Part shown: positions 23,573 through 33,899 of the stretch, piece after piece
How the letters are laid out: every line of letters starts with the position of its first letter
How positions within the stretch are numbered: position 1 is the stretch's first letter
DNA from: Eutreptiella sp. 'Long Island Sound 2002'
Taxonomy: Eukaryota; Protista; Euglenida
Assembly: GCA_964036045.1 (NCBI GenBank)
Contig: OZ038378.1
Coordinates: forward strand, 181,536,001-181,600,000
Length of the DNA: 64,000 nucleotides
Reading direction: 5' to 3'
Translations under genes and position numbers: made by a program
The notes under the pieces: generated by a model
Told to the model about the DNA's origin: nothing
Seen by the model: the letters and a program-made list of their open reading frames with translations, nothing else
Database searches by the model: none

Positions 23573-24429
23573 CCCCCCCCCGCCCGTTGGCAGTCGCCGC
23601 CGTCGCGTCCCCTGAGACCGGACAGCACCACACCCGCTGCCACACCGGGGGTCCGGCCCTCTCCAGTGCCCTGGCGGGCACCTGGGCGTCACCCTCCACG
23701 TCCGTCCCTCCATTCGCGCCTCCCCCATTCACAGCTCCGCTCCCTCCCGCGTACTCACACGGCCGTCACCCCGGAAGAGCTGTGTTCCAGCTCACAGTCT
23801 TTAGCGTCTCGTTTTGTTGACTATTGTCCGGTGACAATCGGAAACAGCACAATAACACTGTCCACTGTGGGACAATCGGAGAAGCCAAACAAGTGTAGTC
23901 CGAAATGCCTTGCCTCTGCACTGCAGGTAAAACAAGACGGGGGTCGCACGGGGGACTGTTCGGTCTAGCTCGGGGAAAAATGCTCGCGACCTGCAGCCTG
24001 AGCGAGAGCCGTGGGTGGGCAGGGGTGGTATGGAGTTTTGGGGGTAGGAGAGTGCGGCAAAGGTCCCCTGCTTCCTTGGCTGACCCAAGAGTGCATTGCC
24101 CTGCAGTGAGCTACGCCCATCAAACAGCACGGGTGCTGCACATGACAGATACTTACACCCAACAGGCTTGAGGGGGGGCACTTGCATCGTGCGCACCAGA
24201 AAACGGCCCCAGGCATAAAAGGAGCCCCACAAGCAGGCAGAAACAGCAAACCACACAATCACAGTGCTCCAGCATTGAAATCAGTCTGAGGTTCCTGCTG
24301 GACGGCGATCAGGCACAAGCCTCAGCACCTCCACAGGGCTCCCTTCTCACAGACACCAGACACCTTGTGCCCCCTTGCACCCCTTGCACAGGGCACACTG
24401 CCACCCCCCGCCCCCCTTGTAATCCCCAC

Positions 24430-24443
24430 CCCTAATGTCAGGC
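24430..24443 (+). repeat. Left target-site duplication of the LINE
   Basis: CCCTAATGTCAGGC, identical to 33340-33353. Confidence 0.85.
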
Positions 24444-24724
24444 ATGCGGAGGTTCCCCAGCGCGAAGAGGCCGCCTGGGTTTTGCCATGGGAGGTAGCTC
24501 GCCTCCCAAAACACTCGAAACCGCATGCCCCCCCCCCCAGGGACAGCCAGCAAGAACCTCCGGGGGCGAGAGTTGGGACCCTCCCCCATGCGCCCTGGGC
24601 CATGAACCGACATGAGCCCCGTTAGAAACAGCCTCAGCTGGCCTGTGGCCATGCACAACTGAGCCAGCCCCGGGGGGAACCAGCCTGGACGGCCCCCCGG
24701 CGCGCCCCCCCTGACAACGCGGGG

Positions 24725-25040
24725 CCAAAAGCCTGTGGTGAGGCCCTCGCGCACACGCTGGCCCGGGCCCCAATAACCTCCTGGTGAGGAGCCCGGCGCC
24801 TGGGGGGGTCGCCAAAAGCCTGTGGTGAGGCGCCCCCCCCCCCCCCTCCTGTGCTGGCCCGGGCCCCAATAACCTCCTGGTGAGGAGCCCGGCGCCTGGG
24901 GGGGTCGCCAAAAGCCTGTGGTGAGGCGCCCCCCCCCCCCCCCTCCTGTGCTGGCCCGGGCCCCAATAACCTCCTGGTGAGGAGCCCGGCGCCTGGGGGG
25001 GTCGCCAAAAGCCTGTGGTGAGGCGCCCCCCCCCCCCCCT
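24725..25040 (+). repeat. Tandem ~96-bp monomers in the LINE 5' UTR
   Basis: ccaaaagcctgtggtgagg recurs at 24725, 24812, 24908 and 25005 (spacing 87, 96, 97), with near-identical units containing long C runs. Confidence 0.9.
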
Positions 25041-25346
25041 CCTGCACTGCCCTGCCGCCCCCCCTTGCCCACGCCCTCCACGAGCTCCGCCACACTTGTG
25101 CGCCCCTCTGCAGGGTCACTGACCAAGCGGAGAGGGACGCCAGCGCGCTCCGAAGAGCACCCCACAGCGCGCGCACTGCCGCGCGCCACCAAGCAGCACC
25201 TCGCGCGCCGCCCTCCAGCCTCGCGCGCGCCAGCAGCACAACAACGCACGCACAGCGACCACCAACAAACCCTAGCGCCAACGCCTGCTGCACACGCACG
25301 TCACCCGACCCGCTCTTCAGGCCGGCCTCTCTCCCCTGCAGACAAC

Positions 25347-27404
25347 ATGGCACACCCGTTCACACAGTTGTCCCAGGATGAGCAGCGGCAGCAGCTCAGC
25401 TGTGCTGATGCATGGCCCCTGCTTTCCCTCTCGTTCAATCCTGCGGCCCGGCGCCTACTGATTGCAGCCCGCCATCACGCGGGCCGCACAGACGTGTTTG
25501 ATGTCGATCTGAACGTGTCCGCCCTCTCCGCCTCAGTGATGCTGTGGTGGTGGAGCGTGACACGGCAGCTACTTCCAGCCGAGCAGAGCCTTCTCGAGGA
25601 GCATCTCCCTGGCTCATGGCTCTCTTACCGGTCCGCCCTCGAGCTCCTCATCGACTGGGCCGCGGGCGCCACGGAGACGCAGCGCCACGAGCTGGTCCGC
25701 GACGCGGCTCAGCACTGCACCCCCTTTGGCGATGGCCCCATCCGAGGCCTTGACTTCAGGACCCTGCTGGAGATCCTGTCCCACGTTCGCCCCATCAAGC
25801 CCGTGATCCTTCGAGTCCCCTTGCTCCACTGGCTCTCCCAGTGGGCTGCGCAACACACAGGCAGCCCCCTGCGCTGCCCCCAGATCCAAGCCATCCAGGA
25901 TGGAGCTGGCGGGCCCGGAGGCTCCCCAGTCCTGCGCCCTTCCCCCTGCCCCGTCAGCGCCCAGACGTGGTACCAGGAATTGCGCTCCCGTGAGCGCGAG
26001 GGCTCCATCACATTCCCCACCGCCCAGACCGTCCTAGCAGCCGCCGAGACCAAAGCCAAGTCCATCCTACACCCCGTGGCGGCCCCGCGCCCCCCACAGG
26101 CCCCAGCGCAAGCCCCAGCTCAAGCCCCACCGCAAGCCCCAGCGCTCACCGCCCCACGCAGCGCCCTTCCCACATGGGAGCAGTTCCTGGAGCAGGCCCC
26201 CCACTCCGGCTCTCAGGACATCCTCTCCCTACTCGATGGTCTTGCTTCCGTCCCCGACGCCTCGGCCTCCCACGTAGCCGGCGCCGTCCTGATCATCATC
26301 AAAGACCTGCACCTCCCCCCCAAGGCTTCCCAGCTCCTCAACCTGGCAACCACAGCGGCGCTCCTGGTACCGGCAGTCAAGAACGCCTGGCTGCTCTGCC
26401 CGGAAGCCAACAAACACCGACTTCGCCCAGAGCTAGAGCGCCTGAGCTCCACAGTAGCAGCGAAGTTCGGCTCCTCCCTGAACGTCGCGGCCAAGAACAT
26501 GGCCCTCCAGGCCATTCAACCTCACATCTCCGCCAATGCTGCACGCCCCGGGATCAACTGGTCTTCCGTAGCCCTCCAACTGGCCTCCACCCCGTCTTTC
26601 CCCCTCACAGCGTACACCGCGCTCCACAGCGTCGTCGACGCCGCCTCCTTCAGGCAGGGCATCAACCAGCTCTGCCAGCCGACCTGCCTGTGCACAGCCT
26701 CTGACTACCAGCAGCTGCAAGAGAGGGTCAAGCAACTGCTGCCCCTAGTCGCCGAGACCGCGAGCTACGACTGGTTCTTGGCGGGTTTTTCCGCCCCCCC
26801 TATCGGCCCCTCTGCCGTCCTGCCCGCTGCCACGGCCCCCCTCCCGTCGTCGGGCTCGGCTGCCCTCGCCCCCCTCGCCGCGGCTCAGCCGCTCCCGACC
26901 TTGGCCCTCCTCCCTCCGCCCCAGCCGCCATCCACCTCGGCCCCGGCGCCCTGCGCAGTGCGCATCACCGGCCTCCAGGGCGGCAGTCAGGAGGCCATGA
27001 CCGCCGCACTCACGCTCACCCTAGGGGTACCGGTCTACGTCACCGCCGCCGACAGTCGCCGCGGCTGGGGCGTAGCGGTTATACCCCCCGCGGTCCACGC
27101 CTCCCTGTTTGCGTCTCACCACAAGCGCCTCCTACAGCACCCGGACGGTTGGGAACTGTCCCTCACCTGCAGGAATGAGTCCACTGGCGAGCCCTGGAGG
27201 GTCGGCAACAGCTCACTGTCCGACCCCCCGTCTCAGCGACCCGAGGCGCCCCGCGCCCACAAGCGAGTACGAGTCGAGTCCCCTGCGTCCCCACATCGCC
27301 GCTCCCCCCGTCTCCAGGAACAAGCCCGCCACGTACACAAAGGCCCTCGCGCCGGTCGCGCGGTTCGTGGGTCCCTGTGGACGGGCCACCAGGAACGGCG
27401 CTGA
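25347..27404 (+). CDS. LINE ORF1 protein (685 aa from first ATG), with a C-terminal RRM-like domain
   Basis: Open frame 25065-27404; first ATG at 25347 (MAHPFTQ...). RNP2/RNP1-like AVRITGL...RGWGVAVI, basic C-terminus, no CCHC knuckle seen. The RRM call is by eye. Confidence 0.8.
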   Translation: MAHPFTQLSQDEQRQQLSCADAWPLLSLSFNPAARRLLIAARHHAGRTDVFDVDLNVSALSASVMLWWWSVTRQLLPAEQSLLEEHLPGSWLSYRSALELLIDWAAGATETQRHELVRDAAQHCTPFGDGPIRGLDFRTLLEILSHVRPIKPVILRVPLLHWLSQWAAQHTGSPLRCPQIQAIQDGAGGPGGSPVLRPSPCPVSAQTWYQELRSREREGSITFPTAQTVLAAAETKAKSILHPVAAPRPPQAPAQAPAQAPPQAPALTAPRSALPTWEQFLEQAPHSGSQDILSLLDGLASVPDASASHVAGAVLIIIKDLHLPPKASQLLNLATTAALLVPAVKNAWLLCPEANKHRLRPELERLSSTVAAKFGSSLNVAAKNMALQAIQPHISANAARPGINWSSVALQLASTPSFPLTAYTALHSVVDAASFRQGINQLCQPTCLCTASDYQQLQERVKQLLPLVAETASYDWFLAGFSAPPIGPSAVLPAATAPLPSSGSAALAPLAAAQPLPTLALLPPPQPPSTSAPAPCAVRITGLQGGSQEAMTAALTLTLGVPVYVTAADSRRGWGVAVIPPAVHASLFASHHKRLLQHPDGWELSLTCRNESTGEPWRVGNSSLSDPPSQRPEAPRAHKRVRVESPASPHRRSPRLQEQARHVHKGPRAGRAVRGSLWTGHQERR

Positions 27405-27461
27405 CTGGTACTACCCGACCTCCTGCCGTCAGCTGCAAGCCCGGACAGCGCGTCCCTGGCG

Positions 27462-30400
27462 GTGGCCCAGGCCCTAGCCGCCGACCTCACCCCCAGCAGG
27501 GCGGTCCGCTTATCAGCGCAACTTCGGGCCCTGGCTGGCGCCCCGCCCCTGTCCCCCGCAGACATGCCTCAGTCACCGGCCTCCACCCCCCCCCCCCCCC
27601 CAGCCTGGTCCCCGCTTCCCCCAGACGACCACTCCCCCGTAGCCTGCCTGCACTGCGGCACCTTGCTCCCCCGCGCCGGCCTCCCGGCCTGCCCGCTGTG
27701 CGACCACTCGGGCTTCCTCCTGCTACAACGTATCCCCTCCCTCACCCTCCCGCCCGAACTCCTCCAGCTCCTCCCCTCGCTCCCTTCCTGTGCCCCAGCC
27801 ATCCCGCCGGCGGCCATCCTGGCGTCCCTCCCCGTGATCGCCGACTGGCTGGAGCAGTTCCCTCCCTCCATCCACCCCACCGCGTTCCGAGTCACGCCGC
27901 CGCTCCATGTCGGCGATTACTGGACAAGTTTCTGGTCCCACGACTACACTGCGGACTGGACCGCCACCCCCCCAGCCCACACCCCTCCTCCCCTCTTCTA
28001 CTGGCGCCACCCCAGCGCCGGCGGCCCATGGGCGATCGGCCCCGACCTCCCAGGTATGCCCACCGTCATCTCCGCTCCCTGCCCCACTTGCGGCCGCCCG
28101 TCGCCGCACGACGCCTCAGTCGGGCTACCCACCGCCCCCCCCCTCACCCGCCCCCGCCTCTTCTGTGTGCACCCCCAGAGGCATGCGCCCTTCTGCACCA
28201 GGGCCCTAGCCCCGCGCTGCACCCTCACGTATCACGGACTTCATCTCTCTGGCGCAGTACCGGTTTACGCCCTCCCTTGGTCCACCCTGTGCGCCCCGCA
28301 CCTACCGCAGCTCCTACTCCCCCCCCCGCCGTATCTGCGGGCGCTGCCCCCTCCAGCCCCTTCCGAGGCCGCCCTCGTCCAGCCCACGGCCCTCACCTTC
28401 ATGACTCACAATTGGGGGGGCATCATACTCCAAACTGCCCTTGCGCGCCTCTGGGTAGACGCGCTCAGCCCCGACATCCTCTGCTGGCACGAACTTTGGG
28501 ACGTCAGCGCCGCCCGAGCAGCCGTGCCCCCCACATATGAAGCCATGTGGAGCACGGCAGATGGCGCTGGTACCGGTTTCGTGATCGCCTGGAAAAGGTC
28601 ACTGCGCCGGCGCCCCGAGGAGGCCACGCTGGTGTTTGATGGCGAACACTGGATGGCCGCCCTGCTCCCCCTGTGGCATGTCGGTCGGCTGCTGGTGGTC
28701 AACGTCCACCTCCACCCCAAGATCCCCTACCGCGAGTGGCTGCAGCAGGTCCGTCGCATGGAGCAGCTCCGTCGAGACTTGCAGCCTTCCTACACCTATC
28801 TCTCGGGGGACCTCAACGCCACCGACGCCCCAGGTACCCCCCTCTCCTCAGCACTCTCCCCGTCAGGCCCGCTCCGCGATTACCACCGAGTCCTCCCTAC
28901 AGGCACCACCACCAATCACACCACGGTCAAGGGCATACGCCGGGCCACAGCCATAGATCACGCCTTCATCCACGGCCCGGTCGCCGAAACCCGTCACCAA
29001 CTACTCTCGTCCCGCAGCTCCCACGCCGTCATCGTCATCACCGTCACTCTCCTCACCAAATCCGCCGACGCCTGGGCCTGGCGCCGCTTTCGATGGCGTC
29101 AGGCCAGCCCCTCGGACATGGACGCCATGGGGGCCGCCCTGGACCTAGTCTGGGGCTGGCTGGCCCTCACCCCAGCGCTGCCGGACGACTACGTCGCCGC
29201 ACACCACGAGGTAGCGTCGCAGCTTATCCCCCGCCCCCCGGACACACGCCAGCTCATGCTCCGCCTGGCCCAGCGCAGCTTCCCCCTGGGGCCCAACCAG
29301 CTAGACCAACAACTCGCGGACCTCCGGGAAGCGGCAGAGGCGCGCGGCATCCAGAGCCGCCTGGACGTCCTTCGAGCGGCCTCCATCACAGCGGCCACGC
29401 GCACAGCCCTTCACCTCCCCTCACCCCCCCTCGAGCCGTTCAGCGGCATCCTCCCCCGCCCAGAAGCCTCCCTCCCCACCAGGGAGGCCCGCCTCGGCGA
29501 AGTCCTCCGCCAGTCCACAGCGCAGACCTGCAATCGGTTCCTGCACCTCGACCACGAGTTCTTTGCTACCCACTGCGACCCCTCCGCGTGGGCCCCCATG
29601 CGCCGCCCGTCCCTTGAACTGCCCACAGTTCACCTGCTTGCCCTCCTACGGGCTGGTCTCCCGCCGGACCACCCCGACACGCCCCGGATCTTCTTCCAGA
29701 GCCTTAACTCCCGCCCGCTGCTGACGCCTGAGTCCCTGGCCCACCGGCGCCTGGGCAAGCGCACCCTGGCGGTATCATCGGACAACGTCACCCGCTCACT
29801 GCTCTTCCGGGCAGGAGGGGGGGTCCAGCAGGGCCTGCACCACTCCCTGCTTCAAGCTGAGGCGGGCACCCCCACGGTCCTCAATGAGACTGTGCGCTAC
29901 GGCATATACAAGGGCAAACCCAGCAAACCCCTGCCCCGTCATCTCGCGCGCTCATTCCGACCGGTCGACGTCGAGTCCGCGGCCTCCGGGACACTCTCCG
30001 GCATCGCCTCCGACCGACTCGCCGCCAACCTAGAGGTATCAGGCGCCTACACCCCGGTCGTCTTCTCCTACCGCACCGGTCAGAGCTCCGCCTTCATGGT
30101 CCTGGTCGGCAGAGCGGCGGTGTACGCCAGCCTCCTAGAGCACAGCTCCTGCGCGATCTGTGACTGGGACGAGTCCGACGCGTATTTGCGCGTTGTACGG
30201 GAGTTCACACGCCGTCTCCTCGGCTGTCTGCCGCACGTGTGGGACTACTCGCAGTGGGCCCACGACTTCTACAGCCGCCTAGTCATACGGGTGATCACCC
30301 GTGAGGGCTTCGCCCCCCCCTTCTCCACGGGGGAGGGCGGCAACCAAGGGGACGCGTTTGCGGCCCTGCACTATCAGGCCCCCAGCCACGTCCTCACCCT

Positions 30401-32789
30401 CTCCCAGGCCATCAACTGGTCCGTGTCGCTTCCACTACGCCTACCGGGCCACAGCGTCCCCCTACCGGCAACCACGCTGGTCTACAGCGACGACCGACGC
30501 TTTCTGGCCCCCACCCTTCCTGAGGTGGTGGCCATGGCCGACGCCAGCCGCGACGCATCCCGCAGGGCTGGCAGGATCGTCCACCCCGACAAACTCGAGT
30601 ACTTCCTCGCCCGTCTAGGGCACCACGGCATCTCCTTGGAGCGCAGCCTGGTTCCGGACTCCGAGATGTACACCAGCACCACGCCTCCCGAGCTCGTAGG
30701 TATCCCTCTTCTCCCCGAGCTGCCGCTGCACCGCCCCGCCAACAAGGCCCTCACCGCGCTGCGCAACGTCCACAAATCCACAGTCCGCGGTCCGGCTTCC
30801 CCGGCCCTTCGCCTCCGATCCCTTCACTCCTTCGGGCTGTCTGTCCTGGACTACGTGGCCAGCGGCGTCCTCCTCCCACCAGACACCCTTCGCCCCCACC
30901 AACGCGTCACCGACGCCGTGTACTCCGCAGCCTTTCGTCTCCCCCCTTGGGTTCACCGGCCCCTCCTCCGCCTGCCCTTGGCCTCGGGAGGCTTTGGCGC
31001 CCCCGACGTGACCCTGCGCTCACACCTGCACCTCCTCACCTCCTACCTGCGGGCGTCCTGGAGCACCAACCTCTTGGCCGTAGCCGCATCCCACCATCTC
31101 CTCACCCTCCCCCCCCGGGCTGGCTGGCTCCCTGAAGGTCTACACCTGCGACAGCAGCTCCTCCCCCTGGACGTCGCCCTGCACCCGTGCCCCTCACCCA
31201 CCCTCGATGAGGTCCGATTCTACAGCTCCGGCGACATCACCCTCCTCAGCACCATGCACCACGTCGTCGCCGCAACGGACGGCAGCCAGATGCACCACCG
31301 TCTGGGGGCTGGAGTCGCCCTATGGCACCCGACTACCGGCATTTTTTACAAGCTGTGGTTCGGGGTGCAGACCAGCGCAGGCCACTCCACTGACTCAGAG
31401 TGGCTCGCCAAAGTGGCGCTTTTCTTCCTTCTCGGGAACTGGAGCGGCACGGTACTGCTCGCCACCGACTCCACCGCGGCGCTCACAGCCAACCTAACAC
31501 GGTCCCCACGAGCCGGCACCTTACTACTTCTCCCCTTCCGCGCCGCGCTCATCCAGCTACAAGCGCGAATCCTGGAGGTATGGCTGCCGGCTCAGCACGA
31601 CAGCGGCGCAACCACCCTCCTCGCCCAACTCAACGCCGAAGCCGACCGCCTGGCAGACCTGGGCGCGCGCGAGGCGCGCCTGAACGCCGTGCCTTGGCTC
31701 CCCCTCTTTTCCGGCCGCGTCCTGGCCACGCACCAGGGTCGCCTCGTCCTCGACCCCCGGAAGGCGGCCGAGGCGATCACCCTCCAGCACCACGAAGCAG
31801 AGTTCGCCCGACATTTCCCGCCACCAGACCCCACCTGGTCGTCATCCCATATCATCGACGCCATCGACAACGCCGCCATCGAGCCCAGAGCGATCCACAC
31901 AACCATGCTCCACCGCTTGCTCTCATTCCAGCGCCACCCCCCCGGGTATGGTGGGGTAGTCTGCCCCTACTGCCACCTGGCGCAGCCCGACATGACCGAC
32001 CACTTGCAGCGCCGCTGCCCCCCTTTCTTCCTACAGTACCTCACCCTGGCCTGGCGCCTCTTGCGCCACCCGCAGGTCTTCCCCCTCCTATCCTCGTCTT
32101 CCGGGTCCGCGGTCCTTCACCTGGGGACTTTCCTGGCCACCCCAGCGCTTGTGGTTGGCCTGACGTGGAACGCCCTACCCTCCCCCCCCCGCGCCGTTCT
32201 CCACAGCGCGCCGCGCCAGCTACTCCTGGACCTCAATGGCGCCTGGAAAGTGGCCAGCGAAGACCCCCGACGCCCTCCCCTCCTTCACGCGCAGCGAGCC
32301 GCGGTAGCGGCCGACCACCACGTCGCCCTCGCACAGCAGCCCCCCACGCTGCGCCAAGCCCTTGATGCGGCCCCCTCCCTCTGGACCCCGACCCCTTCCC
32401 CCCTCCCCGCGCCCGTCCTCGCCACCTCCGCAGCCCGCACCCTCAGCCTCCGCGACAGCGTCGTCCTCGGATGGCTTCTACGGCGATGCCGCGCTTGGCA
32501 ACTCAGCACGGGCCCGGCACCCTGCATCCCCCTACCTCCAGCGTCTCCCCCGCAACCAGCTCTTGCGTGGGTCGTCAACGCCCTCGGTTGCACACCGCAA
32601 GAGGCCGTCCACATGGCATCATCGGCCCCTGACGACAGCAGCCTGGTGCTGCTAGCACGGGCGTGTGACCTCCCCGTAATTCACGCGCAGCTGACGGAAT
32701 TCCTTACGACCCTGGCCCTACCCGACGGACTCTCGGTGGGGCGCGCCAGTGGCGCGCCCCTGGACATGCATGACTGGCCCGAAGCGTGA
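27462..32789 (+). CDS. LINE ORF2 polyprotein: N-terminal Cys/His modules, APE endonuclease (~28390-29050), reverse transcriptase (~29740-31010), RNase H (~31260-31670), CCHC finger (31962-32018). True start unknown: frame is open from 27405, first ATG at 27564.
   Basis: APE motifs THNWGG, DILCWHE, NVHLHP, GDLNA, IDHAF, SSH. RT motifs FRPV, DWDESDAY, GNQGD, YSDD (30483-30494), HPDK, LPLASGGFG. RNase H motifs ATDGS, SEW, ATDS, WLPAQH, NAEADRLA. Finger CPYC-x8-H-x4-C. Confidence 0.95.
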   Translation: MAQALAADLTPSRAVRLSAQLRALAGAPPLSPADMPQSPASTPPPPPAWSPLPPDDHSPVACLHCGTLLPRAGLPACPLCDHSGFLLLQRIPSLTLPPELLQLLPSLPSCAPAIPPAAILASLPVIADWLEQFPPSIHPTAFRVTPPLHVGDYWTSFWSHDYTADWTATPPAHTPPPLFYWRHPSAGGPWAIGPDLPGMPTVISAPCPTCGRPSPHDASVGLPTAPPLTRPRLFCVHPQRHAPFCTRALAPRCTLTYHGLHLSGAVPVYALPWSTLCAPHLPQLLLPPPPYLRALPPPAPSEAALVQPTALTFMTHNWGGIILQTALARLWVDALSPDILCWHELWDVSAARAAVPPTYEAMWSTADGAGTGFVIAWKRSLRRRPEEATLVFDGEHWMAALLPLWHVGRLLVVNVHLHPKIPYREWLQQVRRMEQLRRDLQPSYTYLSGDLNATDAPGTPLSSALSPSGPLRDYHRVLPTGTTTNHTTVKGIRRATAIDHAFIHGPVAETRHQLLSSRSSHAVIVITVTLLTKSADAWAWRRFRWRQASPSDMDAMGAALDLVWGWLALTPALPDDYVAAHHEVASQLIPRPPDTRQLMLRLAQRSFPLGPNQLDQQLADLREAAEARGIQSRLDVLRAASITAATRTALHLPSPPLEPFSGILPRPEASLPTREARLGEVLRQSTAQTCNRFLHLDHEFFATHCDPSAWAPMRRPSLELPTVHLLALLRAGLPPDHPDTPRIFFQSLNSRPLLTPESLAHRRLGKRTLAVSSDNVTRSLLFRAGGGVQQGLHHSLLQAEAGTPTVLNETVRYGIYKGKPSKPLPRHLARSFRPVDVESAASGTLSGIASDRLAANLEVSGAYTPVVFSYRTGQSSAFMVLVGRAAVYASLLEHSSCAICDWDESDAYLRVVREFTRRLLGCLPHVWDYSQWAHDFYSRLVIRVITREGFAPPFSTGEGGNQGDAFAALHYQAPSHVLTLSQAINWSVSLPLRLPGHSVPLPATTLVYSDDRRFLAPTLPEVVAMADASRDASRRAGRIVHPDKLEYFLARLGHHGISLERSLVPDSEMYTSTTPPELVGIPLLPELPLHRPANKALTALRNVHKSTVRGPASPALRLRSLHSFGLSVLDYVASGVLLPPDTLRPHQRVTDAVYSAAFRLPPWVHRPLLRLPLASGGFGAPDVTLRSHLHLLTSYLRASWSTNLLAVAASHHLLTLPPRAGWLPEGLHLRQQLLPLDVALHPCPSPTLDEVRFYSSGDITLLSTMHHVVAATDGSQMHHRLGAGVALWHPTTGIFYKLWFGVQTSAGHSTDSEWLAKVALFFLLGNWSGTVLLATDSTAALTANLTRSPRAGTLLLLPFRAALIQLQARILEVWLPAQHDSGATTLLAQLNAEADRLADLGAREARLNAVPWLPLFSGRVLATHQGRLVLDPRKAAEAITLQHHEAEFARHFPPPDPTWSSSHIIDAIDNAAIEPRAIHTTMLHRLLSFQRHPPGYGGVVCPYCHLAQPDMTDHLQRRCPPFFLQYLTLAWRLLRHPQVFPLLSSSSGSAVLHLGTFLATPALVVGLTWNALPSPPRAVLHSAPRQLLLDLNGAWKVASEDPRRPPLLHAQRAAVAADHHVALAQQPPTLRQALDAAPSLWTPTPSPLPAPVLATSAARTLSLRDSVVLGWLLRRCRAWQLSTGPAPCIPLPPASPPQPALAWVVNALGCTPQEAVHMASSAPDDSSLVLLARACDLPVIHAQLTEFLTTLALPDGLSVGRASGAPLDMHDWPEA

Positions 32790-33322
32790 ACGACCACCGT
32801 CTAGTGCACGTCCTGCCCGCCCTGTCTTGCCGCACGCACCACACAACGACGCTGCAACACGCGTGCGCGCGGGACCACGGTTGCAGCAGGAAACGCCCTG
32901 GGGGCCGCCACACAGCCACGAAACACCCCCCAGGACACACCACCACCGGCCGTCAGAACCGCTAGGCCCCGTTTTCTTGAGGTGAAAACATGTTGGGGCA
33001 AGGCGTGAAGCTGTGGCACTTCGCGGACCCCGTTGTGCCTTGCCGGCAGCACCCTCACCGACACCGTCCAGGCCGACGCCAGCGGCACACTGACGCCCCT
33101 GCGCAGGTGAGCCCCCTACAGCCCTCACGCCCCAGCCCACACCGCATGCGGACCCCCCCCCCGAAACTCGGCAAGTGTCGGCCCCCGGTGGCTCGGGGTG
33201 CCGCCACGGGCCGCCCGCTTCGACCTTACCAGGCGGGACCGAGTAAGCCGCCTTGTGGCGGTTGGGAGCCCCTCGTTTTCTGGGTCCCCCTCCGGCTGTG
33301 CTGGAGCCTCGGGCAGGTCGTT

Positions 33323-33340
33323 CTGAACCTGAACCTGAAC
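33323..33340 (+). repeat. (CTGAAC)3 tandem 3' tail of the LINE
   Basis: ctgaac ctgaac ctgaac immediately before the right TSD; no poly(A). Confidence 0.85.
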
Positions 33341-33353
33341 CCTAATGTCAGGC
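33340..33353 (+). repeat. Right target-site duplication of the LINE
   Basis: CCCTAATGTCAGGC directly after the (CTGAAC)3 tail; its first C is shared with the tail. Confidence 0.85.
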
Positions 33354-33899
33354 CGGTCCCCCCCATGAGGGGGGGGGGGGGGGGGCGGTCACCAAATGAC
33401 GGTCCCCCCCCACCCCAGTTCCAGTGTAACCTAAAGAAAAAATTTCTTTGGCGCCGTCGGCGCCTAGTGTTTCCTATGCTTTTTGGGCCCAGTGAGGGTT
33501 CCCCCCCTGGGGGGGGGGGATTGCAAGGGGGGGGGGGGGGGATTGGGTTGGGGTTGGGTCGTGGCTCGCACCAGAGGTGGGTCCCCACGGCTGGTGTATC
33601 TTTCCCTCACCGGCACGACTGGGTCCTACCCCGGCTGTCTGGTCTCACAGCCCTCCAAGACTGTTGACGACCCCCGAACCCCACCAAGGCGCTGGTGGGA
33701 GGGAGATGCCGCCGTGCAAGGGGGGGGGGGGGGGGGGGCAACACACCAGTCGATAAATGGAGATGGTGCTGCCCTGCGCAACCACCAGCAGCAGGTGATC
33801 TGCCTGCGTCCGGGCCCCAGCAGCGGTGACGGGCCCGAGGTAGGGCATCAGCAGTTGTTTAAGGGACGTCTTGCTGGTGAGCCTGGGCTGCATGGCGGG

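What the first reader, a model, noticed from the sequence alone, without database searches (positions are those of the whole stretch)
27462..32789. Highly divergent intact LINE with an unusual motif set, possibly an undescribed clade
Seen: APE-RT-RNase H-CCHC order, but motifs deviate throughout: YSDD for YADD, FRPVDV for YRPISL, VFSYR for QFGFR, DESDAYL for DxxKAFD, GGNQGDAFAA for GVPQGDPLSP. Known: RT-RNH-CCHC order is typical of I-group elements, whereas the LPxxxGGLG thumb motif (here LPLASGGFG) is typical of L1/Tx1-like elements. Inference: a mosaic or deep-branching lineage. The intact frames and perfect TSD suggest recent activity.
Basis: partly seen in the sequence, partly recalled or inferred. 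Interest (0 to 1): 0.75.

Follow-up and report, generated by a model that had tools for sequence, protein, structure and literature searches.

The report
Young Euglena LINE, highly divergent clade
This is a real, recently active 8.9-kb jumping gene (a LINE) in a Euglena genome, and its copying enzyme has drifted so far from all catalogued LINEs that standard domain models miss it and family trees cannot place it.

Summary
Window 27462-32789 is the ORF2 of a complete 8.9-kb non-LTR retrotransposon (24446-33340). It has a 13-14 bp target-site duplication, a fixed (CTGAAC)3 tail and a monomer-repeat 5'UTR. At least 11 copies are 97.6-99.7% identical, and four have both ORFs intact.

The host is a Euglena: the spliced leader occurs 3309 times against 0 for the control.

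All quoted motifs are present, and they are hallmarks of a whole clade (642 clustered proteins, none named). Pfam misses the RT and RNase H. AlphaFold models (pLDDT 89) match LINE RTs (R2 and L1 ORF2p, E about 1e-15) and RNase HI (Z 13.2).

In an RT tree the clade is monophyletic (100/100) on a 3.2 substitutions/site stem. AU tests cannot reject sisterhood with either R2-like or L1-like rows, so placement is open. No Repbase references were available.

The "mosaic" idea is not supported, because the GG(L/F)G thumb motif also aligns to R2.

Other features:
- ORF1 and ORF2 are in frame across one conserved UGA, which suggests readthrough.
- A folded 250-aa C-terminal domain of unknown function follows the CCHC.

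The scan noted this stretch again (s1-197962) and another divergent-RT LINE elsewhere (s1-210212).

The parts
24430..24443 (+). 5' copy of the target-site duplication (CCCTAATGTCAGGC), followed by 2 untemplated bases (AT, 24444-24445)
   Evidence: the same 13-14 nt recur at 33340-33353. Other copies have their own 12-15 bp TSDs.
24446..25346 (+). 5'UTR. It includes about 3.3 tandem 96-97-bp monomers (24720-25060) whose number varies between copies
   Evidence: a sharp common 5' end (GCGGAGGTTCCCC) in 12 or more copies, with monomer gain or loss in L016, L022, L024, L025, L033 and L034.
25347..27404 (+). ORF1 (685 aa, MAHPFTQLSQ..., basic C-terminus) ending in TGA at 27402-27404. No known domain
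   Evidence: no Pfam or ESM hit. dN/dS is 0.11 against two subfamilies 76-80% identical in DNA.
27402..27410 (+). In-frame UGA followed by CUG (candidate readthrough site) joining ORF1 and ORF2
   Evidence: there is a single stop in 2480 codons. TGA-CT is kept in three subfamilies. An in-frame TGA is also kept in distant lineages (L042, L039, L037). No conserved AUG lies downstream.
27405..28394 (+). ORF2 N-terminal region with two conserved Cys clusters (CxxC...CxxC at 27645-27707; CxxC...C..H at 28080-28172)
   Evidence: the clusters are conserved across the clade consensus (CxxCG...C, CxxCxR...C). dN/dS is 0.27.
28395..29141 (+). Apurinic/apyrimidinic-type endonuclease (APE)
   Evidence: PF03372 scores 22.8 bits here and 29-44 bits in relatives. 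N, E, D, N, D and H are invariant or nearly so. The clade profile matches human L1 ORF2p EN over its full length (E 2.5e-7).
29907..31031 (+). Reverse transcriptase (motifs 0-E plus thumb) with the clade-specific motifs FRPVDV, VFSYR, DWDESDAY, GGNQGDAF, YSDD, LVGIPLL and LPLASGGFG
   Evidence: the family profile hits R2Bm RT at E 2.8e-14. The AF2 model has pLDDT 89. Foldseek hits R2 and L1 ORF2p at E about 1e-15.
31245..31676 (+). RNase H (type 1, D-E-D-H-D)
   Evidence: the catalytic residues are nearly invariant. Foldseek hits E. coli RNase HI (E 2e-7, TM 0.71). VIA gives Z 13.2, with human RNase H1 at Z 11.8.
31962..32018 (+). CCHC zinc knuckle (CPxC-x9-10-H-x4-C)
   Evidence: present in 23 of 25 clade proteins examined.
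32019..32789 (+). C-terminal roughly 255-aa alpha/beta domain of unknown function, plus the stop codon
   Evidence: pLDDT is about 90 and dN/dS is 0.38. There is no conserved PD-(D/E)xK motif. Only middling Rossmann/methyltransferase-like fold matches were found (Z 5-6.5).
32790..33322 (+). 3'UTR. Its last roughly 351 bp (from 32991) are shared at 96-97% with 19 or more other loci that lack the rest
33323..33340 (+). Fixed hexamer tail (CTGAAC)3 in place of poly(A). The last C overlaps the target
   Evidence: the same three units occur in all young copies, and (CAGAAC)3 in an older subfamily.
33340..33353 (+). 3' copy of the target-site duplication

Best explanation
The finding is ORF2 of an autonomous, recently active, APE-type non-LTR retrotransposon (LINE) of a Euglena genome. 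The element is 8.9 kb (window 24446-33340).

Proposed mechanism:
- A 5'UTR with tandem monomers drives transcription (inferred).
- ORF1 encodes a 685-aa protein with a basic tail and no recognisable domain. It is presumably the RNA-binding partner (inferred).
- ORF2 has no conserved AUG. It follows ORF1 in frame after a single conserved UGA, so it is most likely made as an ORF1-ORF2 fusion by stop-codon readthrough, as in gammaretroviral gag-pol (inferred from conservation).
- The ORF2 part carries two N-terminal Cys clusters, an L1-EN-like APE nuclease, a LINE-fold reverse transcriptase, a type-1 RNase H, a CCHC knuckle and a folded C-terminal domain of unknown function.
- Integration is by target-primed reverse transcription. 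The APE nicks the target, often in C-rich micro- or minisatellites. The (CTGAAC)3 RNA tail pairs by 1-2 nt microhomology. The result is 12-15 bp duplications and frequent 5' truncation. The structures are shown; the steps are inferred.

The element belongs to a large clade (642 protein clusters or more) with at least three deep lineages. Several of these are intact in this genome, and others occur in environmental metagenomes. The RT of the whole clade has replaced canonical LINE hallmarks: DxxKAFD became D(W/G/H)DESxA, QxGF became (F/Y)(S/A)YR, (Y/F)ADD became (F/Y)SDD, and YLG became VG(I/V)P. The clade is not represented in any named database I could reach, and its position among LINE groups is unresolved.
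For: Copies and structure:
- Element ends are sharp and identical in 12 or more copies. At least 11 are 97.6-99.7% identical, and four of these have both ORFs intact.
- Each copy has its own 12-15 bp TSD, and 5'-truncated copies exist (L021, L026, L032).
- Host: the Euglena spliced-leader pattern occurs 3309 times against 0 for the control.

Domains:
- APE: PF03372 is significant in relatives, and the clade profile matches L1 EN.
- RT: the family profile hits R2Bm RT at E 2.8e-14 across motifs A to thumb. The AF2 model has pLDDT 89 and pTM 0.90. Foldseek ranks R2 and L1 ORF2p first (E about 1e-15), ahead of group II RT (1e-8).
- RNase H: Z 13.2, with D-E-D-H kept.

Selection: dN/dS is 0.10-0.38 in every ORF2 segment and 0.11 in ORF1.

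Readthrough: the in-frame UGA is conserved across subfamilies and across lineages only about 25% identical. ORF2 lacks any AUG in two subfamilies. Protein conservation starts directly after the stop.

Clade:
- 642 representatives at E<1e-3, none named, all from ENA or Logan.
- RVT_1 is weak in 6 of 64 members and RNase_H is found in none.
- A canonical LINE in the same genome scores 127 bits on RVT_1, so the miss is not a Euglena-wide effect.
- The clade is monophyletic at 100/100 on a 3.17 substitutions/site stem.
Against: - No Repbase/RTclass1 reference set (Ingi, Vingi, Proto1/2, Dualen, Ambal, Tx1 and others) was available. A described clade could therefore still be the sister or contain this family.
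- The long stem makes any placement prone to long-branch artefacts. AU tests reject neither R2-like nor L1-like sisterhood.
- Readthrough is inferred only from conservation. Termination-reinitiation at a non-AUG codon is not excluded.
- Activity is inferred from near-identical intact copies. There is no transcript, protein or polymorphism evidence.
- The functions of ORF1, the N-terminal Cys clusters and the C-terminal domain are unknown.
Confidence: 0.78

Rival explanations
1. The family is a fast-evolving offshoot of an already described clade. The most plausible candidates are an I-group lineage such as Ingi/L1Tc of the sister kinetoplastids, or Proto1. On this view it is not a new deep lineage, and the long stem reflects one burst of RT change.
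For: - The APE-RT-RNase H-zinc finger order is that of the I group, and Ingi is the LINE of fellow Euglenozoa. RNase H is reported in the I group, plant L1, Proto1 and Dualen (PMC4640811).
- The ML tree puts the clade on the non-R2, non-L1 side, in a polytomy with RNase-H-bearing and PF14529-bearing LINEs (node 93/86).
- ESM feature hits are RT+RNase H clusters from arthropods and Ascomycota.
Against: - The APE matches PF03372 and L1 EN, not the PF14529 type seen in the canonical Euglena RNase-H LINE.
- There is no HDV-like ribozyme or Pr77-type 5' end by Rfam, no 2A peptide, a CCHC rather than a C2H2 finger, and a hexamer tail rather than poly(A).
- A profile search of 1.84 billion representatives and word searches gave no named (for example trypanosomatid) protein among the rows shown.
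- The clade does not group with the canonical Euglena RNase-H LINE clade.
Confidence: 0.3
2. The element is a mosaic, with an I-type RT-RNase H-CCHC backbone joined by recombination to an L1/Tx1-type thumb or endonuclease.
For: By sequence, the APE part is closest to L1 EN among solved structures, while the RT part is closest to R2, with L1 RT only at E 0.23. An RNase H follows the RT, as in I-group elements.
Against: - The thumb motif aligns equally to R2 (AVQDGGLAIP), so it is a shared LINE feature and not an L1 marker.
- PDB holds LINE proteins of only a few clades, so 'closest solved' carries little phylogenetic weight.
- All domains are collinear and co-conserved over the whole clade down to about 22% identity. 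Any chimerism would predate the clade.
- No domain-tree discordance was demonstrated.
Confidence: 0.07
3. It is a Dualen/RandI-like element, and its C-terminal domain after the CCHC is a cryptic second (restriction-like) endonuclease.
For: - APE + RT + RNase H + CCHC followed by a further roughly 250-aa folded domain is the Dualen layout (Dualen is described as encoding both APE and RLE, PMC4640811).
- The RT profile hits R2 best.
- The AU test does not reject R2-like sisterhood.
Against: - No conserved PD-(D/E)xK-type acidic/lysine motif appears in a 16-sequence alignment of the tails.
- A search of the structure model against 48,161 chains, a set that may include the R2 entries, lists no nuclease for the tail. 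It lists only Rossmann/methyltransferase-like matches at Z 5-6.5.
- The tail varies in length (about 36 to 270 aa) and is absent or short in some lineages.
Confidence: 0.05

Closest known systems
I-group LINEs (I, Ingi/L1Tc, Nimb, Outcast, Tad1, LOA)
   Same: - The domain order is APE - RT - RNase H - C-terminal zinc finger.
- Two ORFs are present, and TPRT leaves variable TSDs.
- Some members (I, for example) end in short tandem repeats rather than poly(A) (my knowledge).
- Ingi/L1Tc live in the sister group Kinetoplastea.
   Different: - RT hallmarks are replaced (DES.A, SDD, VGIP), so Pfam RVT_1 and RNase_H do not detect it.
- The APE is of the PF03372/L1-EN type, not PF14529.
- There is no Pr77/HDV-like ribozyme hit and no 2A peptide.
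- The finger is CCHC, not C2H2.
- It has an extra folded C-terminal domain and N-terminal Cys clusters.
- It does not group with the canonical RNase-H LINE of the same genome.
L1 clade (human L1 ORF2p; PDB 8uw3, 9hdo, 8c8j)
   Same: - The APE endonuclease aligns over its full length (E 2.5e-7).
- The RT fold matches at Foldseek E about 1e-15.
- It has a monomer-repeat 5'UTR like mouse L1 (my knowledge).
- Sisterhood is not rejected by the AU test (p 0.28).
   Different: - There is no poly(A) tail.
- ORF1 is not Transposase_22-like (no Pfam hit).
- An RNase H is present.
- The RT sequence barely matches L1 RT (E 0.23).
- ORF1 and ORF2 are joined in frame by a single UGA.
R2 (Bombyx R2Bm 8gh6; avian and turtle R2)
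   Same: - It is the best sequence-level match of the clade's RT profile (E 2.8e-14, motifs A to thumb including GG(L/F)G).
- A CCHC follows the RT.
- There are N-terminal zinc-binding clusters.
- Sisterhood is not rejected (p 0.26).
   Different: - R2 has a C-terminal restriction-like endonuclease, no APE and no RNase H.
- R2 is rDNA-specific and has a single ORF.
Dualen/RandI (Chlamydomonas)
   Same: APE + RT + RNase H, with a further C-terminal module after a Cys/His motif.
   Different: No RLE motif or fold was detected in the tail. No cysteine protease domain was found by Pfam. Relatedness was not testable because no reference sequence was available.
Gammaretroviral gag-pol expression (in-frame stop readthrough)
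   Same: The upstream structural ORF and the downstream enzymatic ORF are in one frame, separated by a single conserved stop codon. The downstream ORF has no initiator of its own.
   Different: - The stop here is UGA (followed by CU in most lineages), not UAG with a pseudoknot.
- No downstream RNA structure was tested.
- The element is a LINE, not a retrovirus.
- Readthrough is inferred, not shown.

Membership tests
APE-type non-LTR retrotransposon (LINE) | Reverse transcriptase of the LINE/group II structural type with catalytic Asp residues | tested here: met
   The family profile hits R2Bm RT at E 2.8e-14. The AF2 model has pLDDT 89. Foldseek top hits are R2 and L1 ORF2p at E about 1e-15. 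The motif A Asp and the SDD are invariant.
APE-type non-LTR retrotransposon (LINE) | N-terminal apurinic/apyrimidinic-like endonuclease with intact active site | tested here: met
   PF03372 scores 22.8 bits here and 29-44 bits in relatives. N18, E45, D151, N153, D200 and H222 are invariant or nearly so. The match to L1 EN has E 2.5e-7.
APE-type non-LTR retrotransposon (LINE) | No LTRs; dispersed copies with common 3' end, 5' truncation and variable-length target-site duplications | tested here: met
   44 or more scored matches, sharp ends, 12-15 bp TSDs that differ per copy, and 5'-truncated copies L021, L026 and L032.
I group (incl. Ingi/L1Tc) | RT branches inside the I group in an RT phylogeny | not testable with these tools
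   No named I-group references were obtainable. With unnamed references the clade sits in an unresolved polytomy and is not sister to the canonical RNase-H LINE of Euglena.
I group (incl. Ingi/L1Tc) | RNase H domain downstream of RT | tested here: met
Ingi/L1Tc | Conserved 5' Pr77 signature with HDV-like ribozyme; 2A peptide; poly(A) tail | tested here: not met
   The Rfam e-value scan of 24200-33600 gave no ribozyme hit. There is no NPGP/2A motif. The tail is (CTGAAC)3.
L1 clade | RT branches inside L1; ORF1 of the coiled-coil/RRM/CTD type; poly(A) tail | tested here: inconclusive
   The ML tree separates the clade from the rows that carry L1 motifs (node 93/86), but the AU test does not reject sisterhood (p 0.28). 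ORF1 has no Pfam hit. There is no poly(A).
Dualen/RandI | Second, restriction-like (PD-(D/E)xK) endonuclease C-terminal to RT/CCHC | tested here: not met
   No conserved motif appears in the tail alignment. No nuclease fold is among the VIA matches to model residues 427-535. The tail was not folded alone, so a weak match could have been missed.
R2 group | RLE endonuclease, no APE; rDNA or other strict target specificity | tested here: not met
   An APE is present. Insertion sites are diverse, mostly C-rich simple repeats.

The most novel reading that the evidence does not exclude
The element represents a previously undescribed, group-level LINE lineage of euglenids and unidentified environmental protists. 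Three features would define it:
- Its reverse transcriptase has rewritten nearly every canonical LINE hallmark (DES.A, SDD, VGIP) yet stays under strong purifying selection.
- It expresses its enzymatic ORF only as an ORF1-ORF2 fusion, through conserved UGA readthrough in gag-pol style.
- It carries a new C-terminal alpha/beta domain.
Probability: 0.5. Interest if true: 0.65.

Novelty: new variant of a known kind. Interest (0 to 1): 0.52.

Why it matters
A published Euglena gracilis assembly annotates only about 1.5% LINE and leaves 32.7% of the genome as unclassified repeats (PMC11252322). Clades like this one, invisible to Pfam RVT_1 and absent from named databases, are a likely part of that dark matter. 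A profile built from this clade would improve annotation of euglenid and environmental eukaryote genomes.

The RT shows how far the LINE active-site motifs can drift (Ala to Ser in YADD, loss of KAFD and of YLG) while the enzyme evidently still works. That is of interest to anyone mining or engineering retrotransposon RTs.

A conserved in-frame UGA between ORF1 and ORF2 would be a clear case of retrovirus-like readthrough expression in a LINE. It can be tested directly in a tractable protist.

Tried and rejected
- Pfam on the whole ORF2 and on its cut domains gave only a sub-threshold PF03372 hit.
- phmmer, and the narrow profile A1, against PDB gave nothing. Only the broader profiles A2 and A4 reached R2 and L1 EN.
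- An Rfam scan for a 5' ribozyme found none.
- Word-based protein searches returned only unnamed ENA/Logan relatives. Cluster look-up gave no names.
- The ESM atlas found nothing for ORF1.
- The control genomes of the genome search are prokaryotes, so they gave no reference LINEs.
- A third protein search seeded with a canonical Euglena LINE gave 120 reference RTs, almost all unnamed. I labelled them only by Pfam architecture and motifs. The clade I first called 'RTE-like' proved to carry L1 motifs (SIDAEKAFDK, GTRQGCPLSP, LFADDMI) and was relabelled.
- The telomere-target idea from a sister note is rejected. The target holds one CCCTAA within unique sequence, and other copies sit in varied C-rich repeats.
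- The hypothesis of a restriction-like endonuclease in the tail has no support.
- A search of the own genome with P0049 failed on a server error.
- Paper searches found no description of Euglena LINE clades.
Full report
**What is there.** Window 27462-32789 is a 1775-codon open frame.
- APE motifs (HELWD, NVHLHP, GDLN, IDH) at aa 313-524
- FRPVDV at 832
- VFSYR at 867
- DWDESDAY at 901
- GGNQGDAFAA at 959
- VYSDDRR at 1007
- LPLASGGFG at 1171
- an RNase H D-E-D-H-D set at 1271-1398
- a CCHC at 1501-1519

The frame is only part of a larger unit. BLAST of the region against 20 other genomic copies gives the same sharp ends at window 24446 and 33340/33341.

The element is therefore about 8.9 kb and has these parts:
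- A 5'UTR of 0.9 kb that holds about 3.3 tandem 96-97-bp monomers, whose number varies between copies.
- ORF1, 25347-27404.
- ORF2, whose frame is open from 27405 to 32789.
- A 3'UTR of 0.53 kb.
- A fixed (CTGAAC)3 tail.

It is flanked by CCCTAATGTCAGGC at 24430-24443 and 33340-33353, with two extra bases at the 5' junction.

**Host and copies.** The genome is 2.28 Gb. The Euglena spliced-leader 24-mer, typed from my memory of the published SL, occurs 3309 times against 0 for the reversed control. Earlier notes of the scan also call this genome Euglena.

A 2-kb RT probe finds at least 44 scored matches out of 453 first-look candidates. Twelve are 98% identical or more, and older subfamilies lie at 93-96%, 80-86% and 76-77%. 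Eleven full or nearly full copies are 97.6-99.7% identical to the window copy. Four copies (window, L015, L017, L019) have both ORFs intact.

Each copy has its own 12-15 bp duplication. L021, L026 and L032 are 5'-truncated.

Targets are not telomeric. Most are C-rich micro- or minisatellites such as (CACCCACC)n, (CCCTG)n, (CCCT)n and (TC)n, and a few are unique sequence. One or two bases of microhomology (C/CC, or AA in L023) occur between the tail and the target. An older subfamily ends in (CAGAAC)3, so the hexamer tail is an evolving part of the element and not a poly(A) substitute added at random.

**Are the domains real?** Pfam sees only a sub-threshold Exo_endo_phos match (22.8 bits). It sees no RVT_1 and no RNase_H, whether ORF2 is scanned whole or cut into domains. 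phmmer against PDB finds nothing.

This blindness is not a property of Euglena. Another LINE in the same genome (L043) scores 127 bits on RVT_1, 30 on RNase_H and 27 on Exo_endo_phos_2.

An exhaustive HMMER search with a six-sequence profile found 642 representatives at E<1e-3 and 361 at E<1e-10. The full-length hits are collinear with ORF2 from the N-terminal region to the CCHC, at 22-35% identity.

With a 64-sequence alignment of these:
- The profile hits Bombyx R2 RT at E 2.8e-14. DESDA aligns to DFAKAF, NQGD to RQGDP, SDD to ADD, and LPlqsGGfg to AVQDGGLAIP.
- AlphaFold2 gives a confident RT-RNase H-CCHC model (pLDDT 89.0, pTM 0.90).
- Foldseek ranks R2 and human L1 ORF2p first, tied at E 8e-16 to 3e-13. 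Group II intron RTs follow at 1e-8.

A second model, covering RNase H through the C-terminus (pLDDT 89.5), matches E. coli RNase HI (Foldseek E 2e-7, TM 0.71; VIA Z 13.2, rmsd 3.0 over 138 residues) and human RNase H1 (Z 11.8). D, E, D and H are nearly invariant in 37 sequences.

The APE reaches 29-44 bits on PF03372 in relatives. Its catalytic N, E, D, N, D and H are conserved. A whole-ORF2 profile aligns it to the full human L1 endonuclease at E 2.5e-7.

Purifying selection acts on every segment. Against a 76%-identical subfamily, dN/dS is 0.10 (APE), 0.10 (RT), 0.23 (RNase H), 0.12 (CCHC region), 0.27 (N-terminal 320 aa) and 0.38 (tail). For ORF1 it is 0.11.

**The motif set is a clade signature.** All 18 diverse members share D(W/G/H)DE(S/T/E)xA(F/Y), (F/Y)(S/A)YR, (F/Y)SDD and (V/T)G(I/V)P. 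The 120 reference LINE RTs instead show xDxxKAFD, QxGF, (Y/F)ADD (occasionally IDD/VDD) and YLG.

Only 6 of 64 members give any RVT_1 match (best E 4e-6, below the Pfam threshold), and none match RNase_H.

None of the relatives carries a name or comes from NCBI or UniRef. All are from ENA or Logan assemblies. One relative, P0021, comes from a run (SRR8925817) listed in a paper on anaerobic-digester metagenomes. It is only 38% identical to its nearest Euglena lineage, which is itself a family of intact 1746-aa ORFs. The clade is therefore old, diversified, multi-lineage within Euglena, and present in other organisms.

**Placement.** No Repbase or RTclass1 sequences were available, so the decisive test could not be run.

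As a substitute I fetched 120 LINE RTs related to the canonical Euglena LINE. I labelled them by Pfam architecture and motifs as follows:
- Myb/zinc-finger plus RT rows were called R2-like.
- Rows with SIDAEKAFDK, GTRQGCPLSP and LFADDMI, including elephant and snake proteins, were called L1-like.
- PF14529 rows and RNase-H rows formed further groups.

I cropped all RTs with jackhmmer, which linked the two sets in three rounds. I checked that motifs 0, 2, A, B, C and E aligned. I then built trees on 327-330 columns.

In the careful tree (LG+C20+F+G4 PMSF, UFBoot/SH-aLRT):
- The reference rows recover the expected order, with R2-like rows basal, then L1-like rows, then the rest.
- The clade is monophyletic at 100/100 on a stem of 3.17 substitutions per site. 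Every other inter-group branch is 0.1-0.9.
- Three internal lineages have support of 98-100.
- The stem joins an unresolved polytomy on the non-R2, non-L1 side (node 93/86).
- The stem is not sister to the canonical Euglena RNase-H LINE clade.

AU tests reject neither clade + R2-like (delta lnL 5.4, p 0.26) nor clade + L1-like (delta lnL 2.5, p 0.28). So the RT says 'separate, very long branch, position unknown'. Deep origin and a burst of fast evolution cannot be told apart.

The mosaic inference has no support. The GG(L/F)G thumb motif is shared with R2. 'APE most like L1 EN, RT most like R2' among solved structures reflects the few LINE clades in PDB.

**Features beyond the finding.**

(i) ORF1 and ORF2 are in one frame, separated by a single TGA. 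This was already noted by the scan as s1-197889. Over 2480 codons there is one internal stop. TGA-CT is conserved in three subfamilies. An in-frame TGA also separates the ORFs in the distant lineages L042 (Euglena), L039 (the metagenome contig) and L037. P0025 and P0049 carry 385-433 extra N-terminal residues in one ORF, which is compatible with a fused form. ORF2 has no AUG in the first 110 codons in two subfamilies, yet the peptide just after the stop is conserved. Stop-codon readthrough giving an ORF1-ORF2 fusion is the simplest reading, and it is inferred only.

(ii) The 255 aa after the CCHC fold confidently. They show no PD-(D/E)xK motif and only middling Rossmann/methyltransferase-like matches (Z 5-6.5). 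The function is unknown, and a Dualen-type second nuclease is not supported.

(iii) Two Cys clusters precede the APE and are conserved across the clade.

(iv) At least 19 loci share only the last 351 bp of the 3'UTR at 96-97% identity. This could be a non-autonomous partner. I could not follow it up.

[quoted passage not shown] A published E. gracilis assembly annotates 1.5% LINE and 32.7% unknown repeats (PMC11252322). That assembly differs from this one: it is 2.37 Gb and its largest chromosome is 121 Mb. I found no paper that classifies Euglena LINEs.

**Verdict.** It is a genuine, young, autonomous LINE of a strongly derived clade with no named relatives. The mechanism is ordinary for a LINE (APE nick plus TPRT), with an unusual expression layout and an extra domain. 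'New clade' remains probable but unproven until it is compared with Repbase.

Noticed in passing
window 27402-27470; also L042, L039, L037: ORF1 and ORF2 lie in the same frame across a single conserved UGA, followed by CU in most lineages. There is no conserved AUG downstream, and lineages only about 25% identical keep the arrangement. This suggests gag-pol-like readthrough in a LINE (the scan's note s1-197889).
   Followed up: partly
window 32991-33341; e.g. G000:C13:29177807-29178157, C9:65651577-65651929, C24:12018262-12018614: At least 19 loci match only the terminal 351 bp of the element's 3'UTR at 96-97% identity, and all begin at the same point. They could be a non-autonomous (SINE-like) partner or another family that borrows the 3' module.
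   Followed up: no
L043 3158-7441 (G000:C8:40793158-40797441): The same genome holds a canonical LINE: Exo_endo_phos_2, RVT_1 at 127 bits and RNase_H, with a 513-aa upstream ORF. Its many relatives form a separate, well-supported clade of their own.
   Followed up: partly
L042 1495-8022 (G000:C23): This is a second deep lineage of the same divergent clade. It has a 1743-aa ORF2 and a roughly 430-aa ORF1 ending ...QRQWL-TGA, and 15 or more intact copies are in the genome.
   Followed up: partly
window 33355-33740: Just downstream of the insertion there are several long homopolymer runs (G16-19, C7-8) within a G/C-rich repeat. Poly-C and poly-G tracts also occur upstream (24530, 24835-25040).
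   Followed up: no
window 24720-25060: The 5'UTR monomer array (96-97 bp, ending in C12-14) varies in copy number between otherwise near-identical copies. This recalls the promoter monomers of mouse L1.
   Followed up: partly
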